51,160 bases of DNA from Histomonas meleagridis 2922-C6/04-290x (taxonomy: Eukaryota; Protista; Parabasalia), in NCBI GenBank assembly GCA_020184695.1, contig JAANOX010000054.1:1-51160 (forward strand). Direction: 5' to 3'. Positions 1 to 51,160 of this stretch are shown in pieces; position 1 is the stretch's first letter; every line of letters begins with the position of its first letter. Position numbers and translations under genes: made by a program. The notes under the pieces were generated by a model. That model had not been told where the DNA came from. It worked only from the letters and a program-made list of their open reading frames with translations, and did not search any database.

Positions 1-3000
1 AAAAAGTAGGTGTAATAGAAATAGGTCTCCAAGAATGAGGATTTTGAGCATCACCTTTTTTGTATAACATAATTGTTTTACTTAATTTAAATAATTCAGG
101 ACATTTTTTAGTTAACATAGTAATTTTAGTAGTAATTTTAATTAATTTAATAGTCATAGTATCTCCTAATTTCCAAATATAATTAGAAATACCATCGGGA
201 CCATAAGCAGCCGCATTAGATCTAGAAAAAATTGCATGTTTAATATTATCATCATCAAAAATATAATTTAATAATAATTCATTACTATTAGGGTTAATAA
301 TATCTTTAAAATCAAATTCCTGGGAGTCATTAATAAATTTTTCTTGACTCCAATTATTACCATATTCCATCATAAAATCTTCAGGATTTAAATTACATTC
401 AGGAGTCGTATTATTAGTGATAAAAACCAACGTAAACATCTACTAGATCTTCCATGTAAAGATTTTGTACAAAACCTTTATGATTTTTTTTATTATTATT
501 ACTAACTTGATTTTCTTTAATTTTAGCATCAATGAACTTGATTTTATTTTCATAATAGTCTTCCGCTGATTGTATTAGATTTATAATATCTTGAGGCTCA
601 TTAATTTCAAGAATAGATTTTATTTCATCCGGGAGGAAATTGATGGTTTTAATAATCTTTTCTTGAAGTTTAGACATTGTATTAAGAATAAATTGAGATT
701 GAGGCTTATGATATAAATCTTTAAATTTGTTTAACCAAAACGTAATTTTACATAAATTATGTGTCTCCATTTCTTTGTTACGAAGATCTAATCTATCTTC
801 TGTGCTAGTGACTACTGTGTTCCTTCTGTTTAACATTTTATTCAACGGAATTTTTTTTAAAATATCTCTTAATTCATCACGAATTAACATATTAATTTTA
901 GAAAGGCAACCTTCCCAAATATAAAAATCTTCATCATTACAATTATTATAATCTTGAGGTTTACAAATTTCTATTAAAGGTTCGATTTTATATTTAAATA
1001 AATCTGGTAATTTAGCTCTAATTTTAAATTTATTTTTACCCCAAGTTTTAGGTAATGATATAAATTGAGATTCTTGTTCTTGATTATCAGAAGTCCATTT
1101 TCTAGCTAAAATTAATAATTGGTCTCTATTTAAATTTTTAATTTTATTTAAATCAAATTCATTATTAATTAAATTTAAATTTACTGGGGGATGTATTTGA
1201 TCTGGAGGAGTTAAATTTAATGTTCGGGAATTTTGAATTGCTTGTAATTGTAAATCTCTATTTAAATTAATACGGTCATTTTCTTCTCTTCTTTGTCTTT
1301 GTTCCATAGCATTTGTTTGTTCATTAATTAAAATGAAAGGAATTTCTCTGACCGCTAATCTTTCTCTTTCTGTAATAGTTCTACTCATGAAAACTTTATC
1401 TTCATAATCTTTAAAATCTTTTCTAATTACTTCTAATTCTGTTTCATTAAAATTTAAATACATTAAAGGACAACATTTAATTCTATAATAAGGTAAATTT
1501 GTACCTTCAATAGTATTTAATGCATGATTCTTTTTACAATGATTATGTAAACCTTTAGAATCAGAAGTCCAATATGTTTCACAATATTTACAAACAAAAC
1601 CTTCTTTAAGTTTAATTATATCTAAACATGAAGGAATTTTTGTCGTAAGTATTAACATATTGTAACATTGTAGACCAAAACCAACCAATAGAATTCTTCA
1701 TTTTCTCAAAATCTTTATGAGAATAAGTAATATGAGAGAAAAGGGATTTATTTGTATTTGAAAAATATTTACAATTAGGTATTGGACAAACGTAAACATT
1801 ATTTCGATAACACTCAGGTTTATCTTCTTCATAAATTAATTTCCAATATAAATCATTATTGATTAAATATTTAATGCAACCATATAACGTTTTTGATGAG
1901 GTTTTATGATTATGAACTTTAGTCATATGACTAATCAAATCATTACCTGATTTAGTTAATTTATAACATTCACATTGACAAGGGAATTGACCTGGTGCAC
2001 ACCATTTATTTTCTCTAATCATAATATGAATTAATGGTTGTTTAGCTAAATTAATATCTTCATGTTTCCAACAATTTAAGTTATTCAAATTCTTCCATTT
2101 ATTAATAAAATCTTTAATATCATCAGGTAATCTACAAAGTTTTAAGTCACTAATTAATTTATTATAAATAATATCATCTGGTAATAAATCACTAATATCA
2201 TCAATTCCGAATCTGAATCATCTGAACCCTCTGAATCAGAAGGATCAGGAAAAGAAGGATTATTTGATGGATCATTATTTGAAGTATCAGTAGAAGTAAT
2301 ATGATTAACATTATCATCTGAATAAGTATCTGAAGCATTATAATTTGAATCATCTGAAGAAAAAGTAGATAAATTAGTAATTTCTAAAAATTTTGGTACA
2401 CTAATATAATTAAATTCCAAAATTGGGACTATAACATCTATTATTTTAGTTTCTTTGATAATATTGATTTTCATTTGAGGAATTTCAGCATCATAAGTTA
2501 AATCTACTTCATTAACAGTAACTTTCAAACTTTCAACATTAGCTACTGAAGTTTTACAACCTTCAATAACTTTGATATCATGAGAAAGAACAGTTGTTGT
2601 TGAAGTAACGTTTTGATACTCTGGTATAACAACATGACTTTCAGATATAGGATTTGAAAGTTTTAGTTGTATATACTGTTCATTAATATGACTTTCTACC
2701 AAAGGTTTAGAAGTTGTAGTGATATTAAGTGGTTCAACTGTATGTTCTTCATTGATTGGATTAGAAATTATAGTTTTATTTAAGGGTTCAACTTTGTGTT
2801 CTTCATTAATTGGTTCAGAAATTATGTTTTGTTAATAGGTATTACTTTATAGTTCTTCATTAATCGGGTGGAAGTAATAGTAAATAATAATTGGTTTATT
2901 TATTATGTTATCTATTTGAGCATCTTCTGTTATAATGTTATTAACTTTGCTGATATGTAATTTATCAATTCTAGGACTAGCAGTTAAAATGTTTCTCTTA

Positions 3001-4023
3001 GGTATAACTTCTAATGAATCTGATTCAGTTGTGATATTTCCGGGATTAAAGGATGGAGTAACTTGAAAATCTTGAGAATCAGAATTTATTGTTGGAAATT
3101 CAAGTTCGGGTTCAAATGAAGGTTCTCTCTGAATCCAAATCATAAGTAATAGCCTGAGCTTGAATATCTTCTGTTTCTTCAACAAATGGTGAATTAGTAA
3201 AATTAAAAGTTGCATTATTTTGATTAATTGATCTGTTATCTTGACCAAATGCAATAAAACCAATTTTGGTATTGTTTTGAACTGGTGAACATGAGTTTAT
3301 AAAGTTTTTCGAAAAATCATAATTGCAATTAATTTGTAATAAATTCCAAGTATTATTAGAAGAATTAATATTTATCTGTTGTTGATTAAGAATATTATAT
3401 ACAATGATCTGAGCTTCATTCCTAATGTGAGAAATCTGTTCATCATTCCAAAATAATCTAAACGGGGATTCTCTAAGTCTGTTTGGTCCTATAATAGGAC
3501 GTAAATCGAGAAGACCTCTGTCAAATTCCTCTATCGTTGTAGGAATGGGAGGGTTGTGGGTATTAATTCTTAATATATCATGTTGAATAATAGCTTGTCC
3601 TCGTGCTAGAATAGCCCCATTCGAGTCATTACATTGTATAGGTAAAAATCTGAGAATATTAATATCTGATGAAATAATCACCCAATTTGGTGGTGGAGGT
3701 AATGGTGTTCCTTCTGGGCTTGTTGGTGTTGGGTGGTAATGACGACCTCGTATTAATAAAATTTCTTGTTGAAATGGAAGTTCTTGATTAATCTCAAGAA
3801 CAAAATCTTCATCATTTTCTTTTTGTTCGAGGTCTGGGGCTTCCTCTTCAATAATCGGTTCTATCCTGTGGTCTTGTGCCGTTATTTCATGAGTAGTGTC
3901 GGATTTTTCCGCAATATATTTATCTGATAATTTTTCCGACCGAACAAAACTGGTATCAATCGAGTGCCCTGGGGGAGTTATTTCCGAAAATCGGGTTCTC
4001 GGACGCAAAAAATCAATATTCAT
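1..4023 (-). mobile_element. Non-LTR retrotransposon (probably RLE type, NeSL/R2/R4-like), 5' part, frameshifted; continues beyond the window start
   Basis: ORFs 3112-4023, 2847-3263, 2154-2702, 1612-2088 and 414-1688 chain through frameshifts into one reading. It carries three C2H2-like fingers (CQCEC..HMTKVH, CPIPNC..HITYSH, CKYC..HCKKNH). Bases 1-410 read SRSNAAAYGPDGISNLYWKLG...LSKTIMLYKKGDAQNPHSWRPISITPTF, i.e. RT domains 0-1 of non-LTR elements. The endonuclease domain is not in the window, so the clade is inferred. Confidence 0.85.
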
Positions 4024-4039
4024 GAAAAATCAAAAAAAT

Positions 4040-4113
4040 CTCCTCCCGTGTGGCTCGAACACACGACTTCCAGATTAACAGTCTGACACTCTAACCAACT
4101 GAGTTAGGGAGGA
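4040..4113 (-). tRNA. trnN: tRNA-Asn(GTT)
   Basis: Reverse complement folds as TCCTCCC/GGGAGGA acceptor stem, ACTC/GAGT D-stem, TCAGA-CTGTTAA-TCTGG anticodon arm (GTT) and GTGTG-TTCGAGC-CACAC T-arm, with discriminator G. It is followed by a T7 run typical of a Pol III terminator. Confidence 0.95.
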
Positions 4114-4345
4114 AGCCTGATTTAGTTTAGAACTATATAATAACTTGTCAAAAACTACAACAAATGGTATTTTATTTCAAAGTAGTACCATATATTATAA
4201 TTGGATATCTGTTTATTTTTACTATGTTTGTTTTTATATTCAATCATATAATTCACAGTTTCCAACAACTGTCTAACTCTTAAGCAAAACGTTCCTCACC
4301 ACAGGAATATTTGATGAAGATATCGGGATTATTATTTAAAAAAAA

Positions 4346-4860
4346 CTACTGTTTTGTTTGATGCTTGCATGCAAGAATTGATTGATATTCATCAGATAAA
4401 TAATCTTCTGAAACTTGATCAAGCAAAATACGAAATTGTTCTTGATCTGGATCATTTTGCCGCATTAATTGAATCAAATGTATTAATGTGAAACCTTCAA
4501 ATCCAGCAATATGCATAAATTGTTCTGCAAATTCAGCCATATCATCATGTGCATTGGTTACAGCATAAACTTGATAAGGATCACCAAAAAATATGACAGT
4601 TTTAACTGCAAAAAATATTTGAATGTGATTTCCTGTTTAACCACATAATTTAATTAATCTCTTTGATGCAGCATTAGAAACAGATCTATCTATCTTTGAA
4701 GCAGTTGTAATTAAACTATATAAATTGACAATGCAGAATTTTTGGATTGAATCAATTAAATAACTTTGTCCTGTACCTGCTTTGCCATAAATAAAGGATA
4801 TTGAATCATTGCAATCACCTTCAATAATTGCTTCTTCAATTTTCGTAAATGCTATCAATT
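4346..4860 (-). pseudogene. PIF1-like SF1 helicase relic (Helitron, Polinton or host origin unresolved)
   Basis: SFIYGKAGTGQS (Walker A-like), VIFFGDPYQV (motif III) and LIQLMRQ (motif IV) occur in order, interrupted by stops. Confidence 0.7.
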
Positions 4861-5138
4861 GTTCATCATTTGATTTGTAAATATCCTCATTTGATGAATT
4901 TTCTGTAATTGCGCAATATTCGTCAGTATAATTTTAACAGATTAATTCCAGAATATCATCTGAAATTTCTTCAATAGAATTTGTTTGAGTATTTTCTGGA
5001 TTGATCGTATTAAAATGATTTAAACACTGACGAATTTGTGTTAATCTCTGTAATGAAGGATTTTGTAATAAATAATGGTTAGTGATGAATATATCCTGCT
5101 AAATTGTCTTTCAATTGAATAATTTGATAATTTTATTA

Positions 5139-6065
5139 ATGTATTATAATAATACGCAATCTAAAAATGAAAAAGATGATCAAGGTAATGTGGGAGCTTA
5201 TTTTGATCGTCTTAAAGATTTAATTGCTAAAAATGATGGTACTCGTTCTTTTATTTTAAGAACTGAAGATTGTCATGATCAAAATGCACCTTTTAATCAA
5301 TCACAAGAAACTAGATTAAGAATTACACATGGTGATCATATGGTTTCACAAATAACTGAAGGTTTTATTAATTTTAAAATTAGAATAACTATACAATTAT
5401 CAAAAGCTATTTCATCTGGTAATTTACAAGATCCTGAAAATTTAACTAAAATATTTATAGGTTTTAAGAGTTCTAATCAATTATTAGATCAATGACAAAT
5501 TATGTCTAATAATATTTCTACTGGTTATCAACAAAATGAATGTTGTCGTGAAGGTTATTGTTATTCAACAATTAAACCCTATGCTGAAAAGAAAACTAGA
5601 AAATATACACATTCTTTATATGAAAATGTTTCAGAATATTATCAATCTGTTTGTGGTACTTATGTTGATTTAAATACAATTGCAGATGGAAATAAACATG
5701 ATATCGAATTTGAAATGAATCTTCCATTTGATGATTAATATGCCTTTATTTAATGTTACAACTATTACAGTTGTATTTCCAAAACATGTGAACGTTCACG
5801 TGGTGGTTACATATTTGATGGTTTAGATTCTAATGGTCGAAATATGCCTATACAAATTAAAGGTCAACCAATTTATACACAAGCTAATGATACGTATTAT
5901 AATGTAGATAATGCTGAAAATCATCCACCTCCGCCACAATTATTTATTTGTCGTGATGCTTATTTCACATTAAATTTACATTTACAATTGAAATATTATG
6001 CTAATGGTATACCGGGAAGTATTATATCTTTTAATCTCCCGAACTATTTACCTGATTCTGAGTAA
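5139..6065 (+). pseudogene. Maverick/Polinton probable major capsid protein, copy 1, internally deleted
   Basis: Near-identical to 17646-19274 and 38445-40068 but lacks two large internal segments (junctions near 5738 and 5790). In-frame TGA at 5493-5495. Capsid identity is inferred from size, copy number and linkage to ATPase/PolB/integrase. Confidence 0.65.
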
Positions 6066-21441: not shown

Positions 21442-21775
21442 GGTTTATGTGAAAAGTGGTATAAAAGTGCTATCGTTCCTCTCAAAAAGTTTCGCGTTCT
21501 CTCAAAATTGAATGTGCATTCAAATTTTCAGACGAATCGTATGGCTCACAAAAATCATTTTGATTTTTGTTGCGAGCGGAGCGAGCACACTCGGGGGATT
21601 GAAGGGGTCTGAGACCTCCGGAGGGGTCCGAAGGGCACCTCCGGGGGTCGAAGACCCCTTCAATCCCCCAGTGAAAACTAAAGGTCGGGAATGATCACGA
21701 TAACCCTTGGGGCTCCGCCGGGGGCGGAGCCCCAAGGGTTATCGTGATCATTCCCGACCGCATTATATACCTACT
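21442..21775 (-). repeat. Maverick-type terminal repeat with two long GC-rich hairpins
   Basis: About 130 bp (21442-21573) is the inverted copy of 23088-23210. Hairpins at 21593-21669 (18-bp outer stem plus inner stem) and 21683-21759 (37-bp perfect stem, GGG loop). Confidence 0.8.
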
Positions 21776-23742: not shown

Positions 23743-24500
23743 TTGTTTAGTTTATCTTTCACATGCAAACAATCGAATGGCCTGATAGATGACTTTACAT
23801 ATTCATTTGATTCCTATGGGAGGAAAAACTTTAGACGCGCATATTACAAATGCATTCATGGAAGTAGGTCTTCTTTGCACAAGTGTCCAGCAAAGCTAAA
23901 AGTAGAATTCAGCCAAGATACTAAGAATTTTAAGTATTTGCTAATATCAGAACATAATTGTTTAAACAATGATTTCACAAAAAATCCATATTATTCCGAA
24001 ACACAAATACAAACCAAAATAGCAGAACTTTACAATGACCCACAATATAACCATTTTACATAACCAATATTCAATGCTTTATTAAATTGGGTTAATCACC
24101 CAACACCAAAAGGACAAACAAAAAACTCAATTCCTATTTCAATGGTTAGAAAATACGTTAGATCTCTTACAAACATTGATCCAAAAAATAAATTAACATT
24201 CGATAATTGTTTGACATTTGATGGACAACAGTTTCTTTCATTTTGAGTTGAAATTAATGACAAACCAATATATGGACGGTACTCCGAGCAAAACAGAGAA
24301 TTTGAATATTTTGCTCTCAAATAGTGGAACTACCTATCAATTATGCGTGATTTTTCGAATACACTTGGAAAATTTCCATTCAAATTATTTTTGTAAAAAA
24401 ATATTCCTTCTCAAATTTGATTTCTATGTTTTACATTTTTTGTCATGAAATTTTCTGAAGATTAATATATTGTCATCCAATGGGATATTACATTCATCCT
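23743..24500 (+). pseudogene. Mutator-like element relic, N-terminal WRKY/FLYWCH-like zinc finger
   Basis: YYKCIH..HKCPAKLKV...SEHNC zinc-finger pattern typical of MULE N-termini; downstream frames are broken. Confidence 0.5.
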
Positions 24501-31924: not shown

Positions 31925-32270
31925 ATACGTATCAACCAGGCTATACTGAAAATAATGCAGCTATTTTTAATCAAGTTGATGAGTAAAGTAATTTTCACTA
32001 GTTTTTATTATTTTTTTGATGAATTTTAGAGATAAACTCAATGATAAATAGACCAATGTAACCCAGTGTTGATTGATATTTTATGAATTACCAGAAAATT
32101 CCATGTCGAAAATTGTAAAACATAGAAATCAGATTTGAGAATGAATAATTTCTCACAAAAATATTTCGAATGTGAATTTTTCAATGCTATTCAAAAAATC
32201 ACGCATAATTGAATAGCATTTCCACTTTTTGATAGGAAGGTATTCAAATTCTCTATTTTGCTTGGAGAGT

Positions 32271-33191
32271 ACCGACTTTTCAGATGCTTTTGGTTCAACT
32301 CCTCATGATCAGATTTTTAAAGTTTAAGATCAATTAGGTTTCGATAATAAAATAATTCATTTGATTAAAGCAACTTATAATAATTCATCTACTAAAATTC
32401 GAATCCCTAATAAAGGGTCTTCAGAAGAAATTATTATTAATTGTGGAGTTAAACAAAATTGTCCTTTTTCTCCTTTAGCATTCAATTTATGTTTGGATCC
32501 TTTATTATAAAAATTAAATGATAAAATTTTAGATGGTATTCATTATAATAAACAAAATGATAGTGAACAAGCTTATGCAGATGATTTAATCCTGATATCT
32601 GATACAGAAATTGGTATGAATAATTAAATTAAAGTAGTAGAAGAATTTTGTAAATATGTTAATATGAAGATTCAACCAGAAAAATGTAGAACCTATAATT
32701 ATATTAATCATAATGACAGAAGATATTCCGCTATTACGAATTTTAAAATTAATAACAATTTTATTCCTATGATTGATTTGTATAATGGTAATACTTATTT
32801 AGGTATTATGACTGCATTAACTAAAAATATGAAATTTAGATCCTCCAAATATAAAATAAATCAAGCTTAAGAAGATATTAAGGATATTTGTTCTTCCCCT
32901 TTAAAATGGAACCAAATGATTGATGCAATTAAACATTTTATTACACCTAGTTTATATTACGTATTTATTTTAATGGTTTTACTTCTAGAAATGATATCGA
33001 ATTTTTAAACAAAAGAATTAGATCAGCACTAAACTCTAATTTAAAAATTAATTCTTTACCAAAAGAATTTTACTACACTGCATGGAAAGATGGAGGTGCT
33101 GGTTTGAAGGATCTTAATGATAGATATGATGATTTAATTATATCTTGTTTTTTAAGATTATGGTTTTCTAAAGATGTTTTTCTTAAAAATA
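32271..33191 (+). pseudogene. Non-LTR retrotransposon RT fragment (copy 2), cut by the Maverick B terminus
   Basis: DFSDAFGSTPHD, GVKQNCPFSPLAF, QAYADDLIL, KCR and YLGI motifs with stops; its first ~90 bp overlaps the end of copy 3 at the window end. Confidence 0.88.
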
Positions 33192-33269
33192 AGTACGTAT
33201 ATAATGCGGTCGGGACAAATCACAGGGACCCCTAGGGGCCCCACCTTCGGTGTTTAACTAATAAACCTG

Positions 33270-38410: not shown

Positions 38411-38444
38411 TAAAAATTATGAAAAATATTTTTCATTTTTATTA

Positions 38445-40068
38445 ATGTATTATAATAATACGCAATCTAAAAATGAAAAAGATGATCAAGGTAATGTGGG
38501 AGCTTATTTTGATCGTCTTAAAGATTTAATTGCTAAAAAAATGATGGTTCTCGCTTATTTATTTTAAGAACTGAAGATTGTCATGATCAAAATGCACCAT
38601 TTAATCAATCACAAGAAACTAGATTAAGAATAACTCATGTTGAACATATGAATTCACAAATAACTGAAGGATTGATTAATTCGAAAATTAGAATAACTAT
38701 ACAATTATCAAAAGCTATTAATTCTAGCAATTTACAAGATCCTGAGAATTTAGTTAAAATATTTATAGGTTTTAAGAGTTCTAATCAATTATTAGATCAA
38801 TGAGAAGTTATGTCTAATAATACTTCTACTGGTTATCAACAAATTCAATGTTGTCGTGTAGGTTATTGTTATTCAAGAATTAAACCCTATGCTGAAAAAG
38901 AAAAACTAGAAAAATATACACATTCTTTGAAAATGTTTCAGAATATTCTCAATCTGTTTGTGGTACTTATGTTGATTTAAATACAATTGCAGATGGAAAT
39001 AAACATGATATCGAATTTGAAATGAATCTTCCATTTGAAGATATATTAGCTTTACAAGCATTTGATTTATATCCGAATAGATTAGTTGGTGATATTGAAT
39101 TAAAGTTTTATGTTAAACAAAATGGTTTAGTATGGTGTCAAGTAGATCCACGTAAAATTAAAGAAGTGAAAGAATTTTTAGAAGATTCTTCTATTAATGC
39201 TACATTTAATAATTTACCTTTATTTACTCATGGTTTTACTCAAATAGGTAATTCTGCTTATATAACTACTACATTTAAATGTGATACTGAAACTAATCAT
39301 ACTATTGATACTGCAACTGAGAATGTTTCTTTATATTGTACAGGTTTAACTGTACTTTCATGTAAATCTAATATGTTTGGATTTGGAGTTAAAGAAGAAA
39401 CTTTAAATCAAATAGCTCAAATACTTCAACAACCTGGAGGTTTATTAATTCCTTCACAACAATTAGATTATAATGCATTTGCTTTAGCTGCTACTGAATC
39501 TGGTATACAGTCTACTATTAATATGCCTTTATTTAATGTTACAACTATTACAGTTGTATTTCCAAAACATGCTAATGATTATACTTGTTTTGATAATCCT
39601 ATTTATAATAATGTACAATTAACTATTGCAGGGCAAAATTATCCCGATGAACCTATTTCTACTTTAGGTGCAAGATTTTTACAATATCAATTAGTTGCTT
39701 CTGATTTAGATGATAGTATACAATGTACTAAAGAATTTGAAGATTCTTTAACTATGGATAGAAATGCTTCTAATGGTACAAGATATAATAACACATTAAG
39801 TGATGCTACCTCATCTATGCTTAATATACAATGTGAACGCTCACGTGGTGGTTACGTATTTGATGGCTTAGATTCTAATGGACAAAATATCCCGATACAA
39901 ATTAAGGGGCAGCCTATATATACACTAGCTAATGATACTTATTATAATGTAGATGATGCTGGAAATCATCCACCTGCACCACAATTATTTATATGTCGTT
40001 ATACTTATTTCACATTAGATTTACACAACGGTTTGAAATATTCCAGGGGTACCCCTGATAATTATTAA
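38445..40068 (+). pseudogene. Probable major capsid protein, copy 3, frameshifted
   Basis: Near-identical to copy 2; frameshifts near 38540 and 38930; TGA at 38801-38803; the 3' 348 codons are open. Confidence 0.7.
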
Positions 40069-50084: not shown

Positions 50085-50479
50085 ATGCTAACTCTTACTT
50101 TTAACACAAATATTTGTGTTATCAACGAGTAAATAAATAATTTTATATGAGATTCATCAAAAAGTGTACTTTGTACTGAATTTTTAATTCTTTTCACTTT
50201 TTGATTAAACTCATATAATCATTGGTATTAAATAATTCATAAGTTTATTTTGTCACTTTCTTGTTGTGTATATGAGGGGGTGCCCCATTGTATCGTTACC
50301 ACTTTTTCAATGATTTATTTTTAAAAACAAGAAGAACTCAAGTAACAACGATCCGATAAATGGCATTGATATCCAGACATTTTGTCAATCAATCCATGAC
50401 AATGGAGTCGAAGATACACGTACGTGATGATCGGTCTAGCTTCCTGAAGATGTCTTAAATGGTATATTACTAATAAAAC

Positions 50480-51160
50480 TTCACCTGAATGTAACCTTGA
50501 ACCGGAAGAATTTATTAATGAATATGGTAAAAATTGGAATCAAGAAAAAGTTTTAAATAATTCAGATGAATTTAATATTTCTAAAATTTTAACTAACAAA
50601 GATAATGAATTTTTAATTAATGAATTATTTGATGAAAATCTTATCAAAGAAGCTATTAAATCAAGATCTAATTTATCTGCTCATGGACCAGATGGAATTT
50701 CAAATTTTATATGGAAACTTGGTAATGATTATACTGTTAAAATGTTAAAAATTACTTCAGATATAGTTATTAAATCTCATAAATGTCCTGAAATGTTAAA
50801 ATTAGGTAAAACTATTATGCTTTATAAAAAAGGTGATCCAAATGTTCCACATTTATGGAGACCCATAACAATAGCTCCAAGTATTTATAGAATTTGGATG
50901 GTTATTTTATCTAAAGCTTTTCATAGATTAAATAATATTCATCCTTACATTTCAAGAAATCAAAAATGTTTTATGCAACATCCTAATGGTACTACTGAAC
51001 ATATTAATTTAATAAACGAATGAATTCAACATGTTTATAGAAAAGAAGGTTCAACAATATATTTAACTACTATTGACTTTTCAGATGCTCTTGGTTCAAT
51101 CCCTCATGATCAAATTTTTAAAGTTTTAGATCAATTAGGTTTTGATAATAAAATAATTTA
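50480..51160 (+). pseudogene. Non-LTR retrotransposon, 5'-truncated copy 3; continues beyond the window end
   Basis: WYITNKTSPECNLEPEEF...SRSNLSAHGPDGISNFIWKLG...LYKKGDPNVPHLWRPITI...IDFSDALGSIPHD; collinear with bases 1-430 of copy 1. Confidence 0.9.

What the first reader, a model, noticed from the sequence alone, without database searches (positions are those of the whole stretch)
4021..4113. Retrotransposon ORF starts 16 nt behind a tRNA-Asn gene on the same strand
Seen: a complete tRNA-Asn(GTT) (4113-4040) is followed by A-T7-GA-T5-C and then directly by the ATG (4023) of the long zinc-finger/RT reading. There is no room for a 5' UTR or Pol II promoter. Known: several non-LTR families target or hide next to small-RNA genes (R2 in rDNA, NeSL/CRE in spliced-leader genes, Utopia in U2, Dictyostelium TRE near tRNAs), and R2 RNA is made by co-transcription. 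Inference: this is either a tRNA-Asn-specific retrotransposon, or an element that uses the tRNA as its promoter, with Pol III read-through and tRNA 3' processing releasing its RNA. I do not know of either being described in trichomonads.
Basis: partly seen in the sequence, partly recalled or inferred. Interest (0 to 1): 0.78.

Follow-up and report, generated by a model that had tools for sequence, protein, structure and literature searches.

The report
tRNA-Asn-targeting R2-like retrotransposon, 5' junction
The reading frame that starts 16 bases behind the tRNA-Asn gene is the front end of an R2-like retrotransposon that always inserts at the 3' end of tRNA-Asn genes and rebuilds the gene by duplicating its last 14-15 bases. 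It is a clear new example of an already known kind of element, not one driven by the tRNA's promoter.

Summary
tRNA-Asn(GTT) lies at window 4113-4040 (-), followed by A-T7-GA-T5-C and then ATG at 4023.

The ORF is the N-terminus of a roughly 6.5-kb R2-like non-LTR element: three C2H2 fingers, RT, CCHC knuckle and restriction-like endonuclease. The contig end cuts this copy at RT motif 1.

- **Junctions:** All 14 5' ends of this family and its sister family abut tRNA-Asn: seven a full gene, six its last 14 nt, and one is cut by a contig end.
- **Flanks:** Flanks upstream of the tRNA are unrelated between loci.
- **3' ends:** Every element 3' end read is followed by CCACACGGGAGGAG, the tRNA's last 14 nt. 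Elements stack head to tail behind one tRNA.
- **Controls:** One tRNA-Asn gene is empty. One array ends in a T-rich trailer and host genes.

So the tRNA is the target. The insertion makes a 14-15 bp or longer target duplication that restores the gene.

Pol III read-through is implausible. T7, T5 and T6 runs lie within 33 nt of the tRNA, and there are 13 runs of T5 or longer in 4 kb.

tRNA-gene-specific elements of this type are published, including NeSL-1_TV (tRNA-Pro) in Trichomonas vaginalis. Earlier agents of this scan described the same family on other windows. Verdict: new member of a known kind. How it is transcribed remains open.

The parts
4040..4113 (-). tRNA-Asn(GTT) gene, complete, 74 nt. 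It is the target of the element, rebuilt by the target duplication.
   Evidence: ARAGORN; Rfam RF00005 at 61.7 bits. It is 99-100% identical to 14 other copies in the genome.
4040..4053 (-). CCACACGGGAGGAG: the last T-loop base, the 3' strand of the T stem, the 3' acceptor strand and the discriminator. This stretch is found again after every element 3' end read, so it is the target-site duplication (14 nt, or 15 with A4039).
   Evidence: Junction table; pattern count of 25 sites, 12 of them in full tRNAs; a single site in the window.
4024..4039 (-). 16-nt leader A-T7-GA-T5-C. It is identical in all copies of this family whatever lies upstream, so the element carries it. It resembles the natural tRNA-Asn trailer and supplies a Pol III terminator to the rebuilt tRNA.
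   Evidence: The empty-site trailer is A-T7-G-T8.
3112..4023 (-). First open segment (303 aa) of the element's single long ORF. It is the N-terminal region, with no Pfam family.
   Evidence: It aligns to residues 7-236 of the intact 2101-aa relative P0001 (40% identity, E 8e-42). Copy C268 keeps this frame open for 626 aa.
1..4039 (-). The 5' 4 kb of a roughly 6.5-kb R2-like non-LTR retrotransposon ('A-type'). It is frame-broken in this copy and cut by the contig end at RT motif 1.
   Evidence: Continuation with RT, CCHC and RLE is in contig C49, and the 3' end is in C167.
1524..1980 (-). Three C2H2 zinc fingers (1980-1906, 1788-1717, 1592-1524). They are the presumed DNA-recognition module.
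   Evidence: Motif scan; weak Pfam zf-C2H2 hit. The three fingers are conserved in alignment A1.
2..439 (-). Start of the reverse-transcriptase domain (..KKGDAQNPHSWRPISITPTF).
   Evidence: tblastn to P0001 residues 1145-1285.

Best explanation
The ORF is the 5' end of a site-specific non-LTR retrotransposon with a restriction-like endonuclease (RLE), of R2-like architecture. Its only target is the tRNA-Asn(GTT) gene.

Shown by anatomy:
- The element's 3' end (..AATGAATAAA) is always joined to the last T-loop base, the first base of CCACACGGGAGGAG.
- Its 5' end is always joined right after the tRNA's 3' end.
- So the antisense strand is nicked in the T loop, and the sense strand is cut 14-15 nt (possibly up to about 23 nt) further on, at or just past the end of the tRNA.
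- Target-primed reverse transcription then leaves a complete tRNA gene in front of the element and a 14-nt tRNA stub behind it.
- Repeated hits build head-to-tail arrays behind one tRNA gene.
- The element brings its own T-rich leader (or T-rich first codons in sister families), so the rebuilt tRNA gene keeps a Pol III terminator.

Inferred, not shown:
- The three C2H2 fingers read the tRNA-Asn DNA.
- The mRNA is made by Pol II from a start site at or within about 30 nt of the ATG, as is usual in trichomonads.
- The element's transcripts run into the downstream tRNA stub, which can pair with the nicked target to prime reverse transcription precisely, as in R2.

The confidence given is for the site-specific-insertion core. 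The expression steps are much less certain.
For: - The genome has 15 tRNA-Asn copies. Of the 11 whose downstream side can be read, 10 are followed by an element and one (C87) is empty: T7GT8 and then a 2-hydroxyacid dehydrogenase gene.
- All 14 5' ends of the A and B families are preceded by the tRNA 3' end: seven full tRNAs, six 14-nt stubs and one contig cut.
- Upstream 400-nt flanks are 51-58% identical, which is background, except C54/C58 at 96%. Downstream 400 nt are 95-99% identical among A-type copies.
- Every element 3' end read, in at least five diverged families, is followed by CCACACGGGAGGAG. Arrays are seen in C174, C181, C235, C175, C42 and C167.
- The array in C42 ends with stub, T6 trailer, an unrelated 615-aa ORF and then COG6.
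- Protein: RVT_1 at 3e-32. The best solved relatives are R2 proteins 9nl3, 9dou and 8gh6 (2e-50), with the C-terminal CCHC and RLE aligned. The A-type's own RT, CCHC and PD..E..K motifs are in C49. Three C2H2 fingers are present.
- Published precedent for tRNA-gene-specific RLE elements exists in PMC4640811.
Against: - No RNA data are available, so the promoter, the RNA 5' end and any read-through into the stub are inferences.
- No exact Inr (HCAHW) lies between the tRNA and the ATG. The only one within 60 nt is CCACA inside the tRNA stub, a low-information match.
- The duplication length (14, 15 or up to 23 nt) cannot be fixed. The base after the tRNA is A in both target and element, and the leader resembles the natural trailer.
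- Only one array end with host flank could be read (C42).
- All A-type copies seen have broken frames, partly at homopolymers, so current activity is unproven.
- Two internal RT fragments of a related family in this window have no tRNA piece beside them.
Confidence: 0.9

Rival explanations
1. The tRNA gene is the element's promoter. Pol III starts at the tRNA, reads through into the element, and RNase Z cleavage after the discriminator releases the element RNA.
For: - The element begins exactly at the nucleotide after the tRNA 3' end in all families. The leader is carried by the element and looks like a tRNA trailer.
- No ribozyme was found that could otherwise define the 5' end.
Against: - T7 starts 2 nt after the tRNA, and T5 and T6 follow within 33 nt. 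There are 13 runs of T5 or longer and 40 of T4 or longer in the first 4 kb of sense strand. Runs of this kind are Pol III terminators (established knowledge).
- A 6.5-kb protein-coding mRNA is not a Pol III product.
- Elements within arrays have only a 14-nt stub upstream, with no A or B box and no cloverleaf for RNase Z.
Confidence: 0.04
2. The duplicated tRNA piece has a second job in expression. A Pol II transcript starts in it (Inr-like CCA(+1)CA at window 4053-4049), or a longer Pol II co-transcript is cut by tRNA 3' processing. Either way, the target sequence supplies the element's start site or its 5' end, as 28S co-transcription does for R2.
For: - The only HCAHW match within 60 nt of the ATG lies in the 14-nt stub, so every element in an array has it.
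- Independent insertions have identical 5' junctions. In R2, identical junctions go with RNA that carries target sequence at its 5' end (from my own knowledge; not checked here).
- Trichomonad start sites lie within 30 nt of the ATG (PMC7370421).
Against: - HCAHW is expected by chance about once per 57 nt, so the match carries little weight.
- No transcript data are available.
- Sister families place the ATG directly after the tRNA. The distance from this motif to the ATG therefore varies between 13 and 28 nt.
Confidence: 0.15
3. The tRNA is part of the mobile unit: a composite tRNA-plus-LINE element that copies the tRNA along with itself.
For: Homology between copies begins at the tRNA 5' end, and a CAG(G/A)C pentamer precedes every copy.
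Against: - An empty tRNA-Asn gene has the same pentamer and no element.
- In arrays only the first element has a full tRNA, and the others have the 14-nt stub.
- Every element 3' end read is followed by the stub. A target duplication explains this; a carried tRNA does not.
Confidence: 0.02
4. There is no target specificity. One ancestral tRNA-element locus was spread by segmental duplication or is an assembly redundancy.
For: - C54 and C58 share 1067 bp upstream at 97%.
- C174/C181, C235/C178 and C38/C114 share flanks.
Against: - At least five A-type loci have upstream flanks at background identity while the elements are 95-99% identical.
- Families only 52-69% identical in DNA share the same junctions.
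Confidence: 0.02

Closest known systems
NeSL-1_TV of Trichomonas vaginalis (Repbase; Kojima & Jurka 2015, PMC4640811)
   Same: It is an RLE-type non-LTR retrotransposon of a parabasalid, reported as specific for one tRNA gene species.
   Different: Its target is tRNA-Pro, not tRNA-Asn. Its sequence and junction figure were not readable here, so relatedness, insertion position and duplication could not be compared.
LIN15_SM (tRNA-Arg) and LIN25_SM (tRNA-Glu) of the planarian Schmidtea (PMC4640811, S6 Fig)
   Same: They are RLE-type elements inserted at one position of one tRNA species, with the 3' part of the tRNA lying after the element.
   Different: In the figure they sit inside the tRNA body, around the anticodon arm. 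Here the nick is in the T loop, and a 14-15 bp duplication restores a whole gene.
R2 (28S rDNA-specific; solved structures 8gh6, 9dou, 9nl3)
   Same: It has the same protein plan: N-terminal C2H2 fingers, RT, CCHC knuckle and a PD-(D/E)xK endonuclease in a single ORF. It inserts at one nucleotide of a multicopy RNA gene. It is the best sequence match among solved structures.
   Different: - The target is a tRNA gene, not 28S rDNA.
- No Myb domain was detected.
- About 1250 residues precede the RT, including an orphan N-terminal region.
- No HDV-like ribozyme was found.
- In a quick RT tree the family is a separate clade.
Dictyostelium TRE5/TRE3 and yeast Ty3
   Same: They also live next to tRNA genes.
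   Different: Those elements target any Pol III gene by position, through the transcription complex, at about 50-100 bp (TRE) or at the start site (Ty3), and they use an APE nuclease or an integrase. This element reads one tRNA sequence and joins at fixed nucleotides. These statements about TRE and Ty3 rest on PMC5391098 and on my own knowledge.
Dada-tN DNA transposons of fish (PMC8869645)
   Same: They are specific for tRNA-Asn genes.
   Different: They are DNA transposons with a DDE transposase, not retroelements.

Membership tests
RLE-bearing site-specific non-LTR retrotransposons (R2/NeSL/CRE/R4 group) | Reverse transcriptase of non-LTR type | tested here: met
   RVT_1 at 3e-32 in the sister-family ORF. 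The window copy reaches RT motif 1 at 31-17. The A-type RT is in C49.
RLE-bearing site-specific non-LTR retrotransposons (R2/NeSL/CRE/R4 group) | CCHC knuckle and PD-(D/E)xK restriction-like endonuclease C-terminal to the RT, with no APE domain | tested here: met
   Aligned to the R2 C-terminus. Invariant C, C, H, C and PD..E..K residues in alignment A1. Present in the A-type continuation C49. This part is not contained in the window itself.
RLE-bearing site-specific non-LTR retrotransposons (R2/NeSL/CRE/R4 group) | N-terminal zinc fingers | tested here: met
   Three C2H2 motifs at window 1980-1906, 1788-1717 and 1592-1524, conserved in relatives.
RLE-bearing site-specific non-LTR retrotransposons (R2/NeSL/CRE/R4 group) | Insertion at one defined sequence of a multicopy gene | tested here: met
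   14 of 14 5' ends and all 3' ends read lie at the same tRNA-Asn nucleotides; one empty site exists.
NeSL clade (includes NeSL-1_TV) | RT phylogeny groups it with NeSL references | not testable with these tools
   No Repbase references were available. In the quick tree, the one Ulp1+RT (NeSL-like) protein groups with R2-like proteins, apart from this family.
R2 clade in the strict sense | 28S rDNA target, Myb domain, 5' HDV-like ribozyme | tested here: not met
   The target is tRNA-Asn. Pfam finds no Myb domain. No ribozyme family appears in Rfam at E up to 10.
Pol III-driven / tRNA-promoted retroelement (SINE-like expression) | No Pol III terminator between the tRNA promoter and the body of the element | tested here: not met
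   T7 at +2, T5 at +11 and T6 at +28; 13 runs of T5 or longer in 4 kb.
Position-specific tRNA-proximal elements (TRE, Ty3) | Any tRNA species, with a fixed distance rather than a fixed sequence | tested here: not met
   All junctions read carry tRNA-Asn sequence at fixed nucleotides. Other tRNA genes of the genome were not scanned.

The most novel reading that the evidence does not exclude
The target is also the expression device. The duplicated tRNA piece, or the whole rebuilt tRNA in front of the first element, would supply the element's start site or define its RNA 5' end by tRNA 3' processing. In return, the element gives the rebuilt tRNA gene a Pol III terminator from its own leader or first codons. 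That would be a two-way functional coupling between a retrotransposon and a tRNA gene, a tRNA-based counterpart of R2's co-transcription with a ribozyme.
Probability: 0.12. Interest if true: 0.7.

Novelty: new member of a known kind. Interest (0 to 1): 0.4.

Why it matters
- It shows very cleanly how a selfish element can occupy nearly every copy of an essential gene family without disabling it. Ten of the 11 readable tRNA-Asn genes are occupied. The target duplication rebuilds the tRNA, and the element's own T-run re-terminates it.
- Several diverged families, plus a short RT-less partner, share one target. This gives natural material for asking how zinc-finger and RLE proteins read a tRNA gene, which bears on engineering R2-type enzymes for site-specific insertion.
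- For the genome itself, it explains why many contigs of this assembly end at tRNA-Asn or inside these elements.

Tried and rejected
- **Ribozyme search.** An Rfam scan at E up to 10 over window 3600-4300 found only the tRNA.
- **Relatives' DNA.** The 5' flanks of the intact metagenomic relatives (P0001 and others) could therefore not be read.
- **Metagenome scan.** This says nothing about the close relatives.
- **Viral contigs.** No relative was found.
- **More junctions.** The stubs at C30:794, C30:3091, C38:3289 and C250:7794 were not read, and I did not try to obtain those letters another way.
- **Host promoter consensus.** The window has too few long host ORFs to derive one.
- **Clade assignment.** This failed for lack of NeSL, CRE and R4 reference sequences, and only a quick tree was finished.
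- **NeSL-1_TV junction figure.** The held copy of the supplement does not show the NeSL-1_TV part legibly.
- **Organism identity.** I did not test it. Earlier scan notes call it Histomonas, and the genome is 43.1 Mb in 281 contigs.

Full report
**1. The observation**

The window is the first 51,160 bases of contig C54 of a 43.1-Mb, 281-contig assembly.

- ARAGORN finds a single tRNA in the window, tRNA-Asn(GTT), at 4114-4039 on the minus strand.
- The Rfam tRNA model matches 4113-4040 at 61.7 bits.
- Reading on along the minus strand gives A, T7, G, A, T5, C and then ATG at 4023-4021.
- The ATG opens a 303-aa ORF ending at 3112.

One qualification applies. The 'long reading' behind it is not one open frame in this copy. 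It changes frame near 3115, 2157, 1615 and 417. It reaches the first RT motif (HSWRPISITPTF, 31-17) just as the contig ends.

**2. What the ORF belongs to**

- The 303-aa product aligns from residue 4 to residues 7-236 of P0001 (40% identity, E 8e-42). P0001 is an intact 2101-aa protein from a metagenome assembly, found with the RT-RLE part of a sister copy.
- Copy C268 keeps the frame open for 626 aa from the same ATG.
- Three C2H2 fingers follow at 1980-1906, 1788-1717 and 1592-1524. They are conserved in a 14-protein alignment.
- The rest of this family ('A-type') lies in other contigs:
  - C49 overlaps the window's last 1.1 kb at 97%. It continues through the RT, a CCHC knuckle (CPLCGAEDSLRHKLNDC) and an RPD..E..K endonuclease motif.
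  - C167 holds the last 1 kb at 99.7% identity to C49.
  - The full element is about 6.5 kb.
- A sister family in contig C20 has a 1367-aa open frame with RVT_1 (3e-32). Its best solved relatives are R2 proteins (9nl3, 9dou and 8gh6; 2e-50), with the C-terminal knuckle and nuclease aligned.

**3. Is the tRNA a target, a passenger or a promoter?**

The genome holds 15 tRNA-Asn copies at 99-100% identity.

- **5' junctions of this family.** Seven full genes (C54, C58, C236, C268, C271, C6 and C156) are followed by the same leader and ATG.
- **5' junctions of other families.** Two (C174 and C181, which share one upstream flank) are followed directly by A-ATG of a 2.7-kb element. One (C235) is followed by A-T7-ATG of another family.
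- **Unreadable copies.** Four contigs stop in or at the tRNA.
- **Empty site.** One copy (C87) is empty: A-T7-G-T8 and then a 2-hydroxyacid dehydrogenase gene 44 nt on.
- **Flanks.** The 400 nt upstream of the tRNA are 51-58% identical between loci. That is the background for this AT-rich DNA. The exception is C54/C58 at 96%. The 400 nt downstream are 95-99% identical among A-type copies.

The decisive feature is at the other end of the elements. Every element 3' end I could read, in at least five families whose DNA is only 52-72% alike, stops with ..AATGAATAAA or a close variant. It is followed by CCACACGGGAGGAG, which is the last 14 nt of the tRNA.

- That 13-mer core occurs 25 times in the genome: 12 times in full tRNAs and 13 times as stubs.
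- Elements lie head to tail. Only the first follows a full tRNA, and the rest follow a stub. In C174, for example, the tRNA is at 21602-21677 and stubs are at 24348 and 26974.
- C167 is an A-type 3' end, then a stub, then an A-type 5' end.
- All 14 5' ends of the A and B families found are preceded by the tRNA 3' end: seven full genes, six stubs and one contig cut.
- One array end could be read. In C42 the last element is followed by the stub, an A-T6-C.. trailer, about 520 nt, an unrelated membrane-like 615-aa ORF and the COG6 gene.

A carried tRNA cannot produce this pattern, and neither can a duplicated locus. It is what site-specific target-primed reverse transcription with a staggered cut produces.

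- The antisense strand is nicked just 5' of the last T-loop base (the first base of the stub), and that end primes cDNA synthesis from the element's 3' end.
- The sense strand is cut at or just after the tRNA's 3' end.
- Repair duplicates the 14-15 nt between the two cuts. This leaves an intact tRNA gene upstream and a stub downstream.

The duplication could extend into the trailer, up to about 22-23 nt. The base after the tRNA is A in both target and element. The A-type leader (A-T7-G-A-T5-C) differs from the empty-site trailer (A-T7-G-T8) at one of 16 positions. In C42, leader and trailer both begin A-T6-C. The leader is nevertheless constant in all A-type copies, while the two natural trailers I saw differ from each other. 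The element therefore carries it.

**4. Expression**

The Pol III read-through idea does not survive.

- T7 begins 2 nt after the tRNA. T5 and T6 follow at +11 and +28.
- The first 4 kb of sense strand has 13 runs of T5 or longer and 40 of T4 or longer.
- In arrays most elements have no A box, B box or cloverleaf upstream.

In T. vaginalis the core promoter elements Inr (HCAHW) and m5 sit at the start site within 20-30 nt of the ATG, and UTRs are 'remarkably short' (PMC7370421).

I found no exact Inr between tRNA and ATG. The only match within 60 nt is CCACA, at the start of the duplicated stub (A at 4051). It is a low-information match, but every element in an array has it.

No HDV-like or other ribozyme family was detected.

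Every family keeps a T6-T8 run within 13 nt of the tRNA end. It lies either in the leader or in codons 2-4, as in ATG AAT TTT TTT. The rebuilt tRNA gene therefore always has a terminator.

How the element's RNA starts and ends is unresolved. My preferred reading is a Pol II start at or near the 5' end, with 3' ends running into the stub. This is an inference.

**5. Comparison with what is known**

- Kojima and Jurka (PMC4640811) list tRNA genes among the targets of RLE-type non-LTR elements. They report NeSL-1_TV of Trichomonas vaginalis as tRNA-Pro gene-specific, and planarian LIN15_SM and LIN25_SM as specific for tRNA-Arg and tRNA-Glu.
- In their S6 figure the planarian elements sit inside the tRNA body. 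The NeSL-1_TV panel is not legible in the held copy.
- tRNA-Asn is a known target of Dada-tN DNA transposons in fish (PMC8869645).
- The searchable library holds no paper describing a tRNA-Asn-specific non-LTR element. This is not proof that none exists.
- In a quick RT tree, this family and 37 metagenomic proteins form one clade (SH-aLRT 99). It stands apart from a group holding R2-like (Myb and zinc-finger) proteins and one Ulp1+RT, NeSL-like protein. Without Repbase references the clade cannot be named.

Earlier agents of this scan described the same family on three other windows of this genome: the 15-bp duplication, a 2.7-kb RT-less partner and a shared orphan N-terminal domain. I reached the main points independently before reading those notes.

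I saw in passing that the 2.7-kb element matches only residues 1-221 of P0001 (28% identity).

**6. Verdict**

This is a tRNA-Asn-specific R2-like retrotransposon. The 16-nt gap is its own terminator-like leader. The second reading, the tRNA as Pol III promoter, is very unlikely. The finding is a new member of a known kind.

What remains of interest:
- Nearly every tRNA-Asn gene is occupied, yet each is rebuilt.
- Several diverged families share one target.
- It is still open whether the duplicated tRNA piece also serves the element's expression.

**Limits**

- Four further stubs and the flanks of the intact relatives could therefore not be examined.
- Frame breaks differ between copies and often lie in homopolymers. 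Whether any copy is active cannot be told from this assembly.

Noticed in passing
window 1-20; also the starts or ends of contigs C236, C268, C58, C167, C174 and C6: Seven contigs end within about 20 nt of the same position of the A-type element, at the start of the RT domain. Five more (C20, C38, C178, C114, C11) end in or at tRNA-Asn. These look like assembly breaks in unresolved arrays, not chromosome ends, because the extra bases are homologous between contigs.
   Followed up: partly
window 5131-6013: A repeat of about 0.9 kb lies 1 kb upstream of the tRNA. It has more than 40 copies genome-wide at 85-98% identity, including two more in this window (about 17663-19282 and 38437-40025). It is another mobile element, not characterised.
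   Followed up: no
window 32232-33226 and 50448-51160 (+): Two internal RT fragments of a third related family (best match C175:12601-14140, 90-98%). They correspond to adjacent parts of one element but lie 17 kb apart here, among other repeats, with no tRNA-Asn piece beside them.
   Followed up: partly
L017 1677-4345 (C174:21678-24345); also C181:5866-3198: A 2.7-kb element whose ATG follows the tRNA plus one A directly. It matches only the first 221 residues of the RT protein (28% identity) and gives no RT hit. It is an RT-less partner that uses the same target and has the same 3' end (..TTTAATGAATAAA).
   Followed up: partly
5' ends of all families (L017, L031, L036, L037, L043; window 4024-4039): Every family keeps a T6-T8 run within 13 nt of the tRNA end, either in a leader or as codons for N-F-F or F-F. 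Intact relatives from metagenomes also begin MFF.., MFE.. or MIFF... This may be selection to keep the tRNA terminated.
   Followed up: partly
tRNA-Asn copies, T loop (window 4056): The 15 tRNA-Asn copies differ only at one T-loop base (TTCGAGC, TTCGATC or TTCGAAC), a few bases upstream of the nick site. All loci share a CAG(G/A)C pentamer just 5' of the tRNA.
   Followed up: no
L027 (C271:10123-12966): This A-type copy behind a full tRNA stops at about residue 886 of the protein, without the element's 3' end or a stub. That is a 3' truncation, which target-primed reverse transcription does not produce, so a later deletion or insertion is likely.
   Followed up: no
window 4024-5090 versus C58:3825-4891: C54 and C58 share 1067 bp upstream of the element at 97% identity. 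This is a duplicated locus or two haplotypes of one locus.
   Followed up: no
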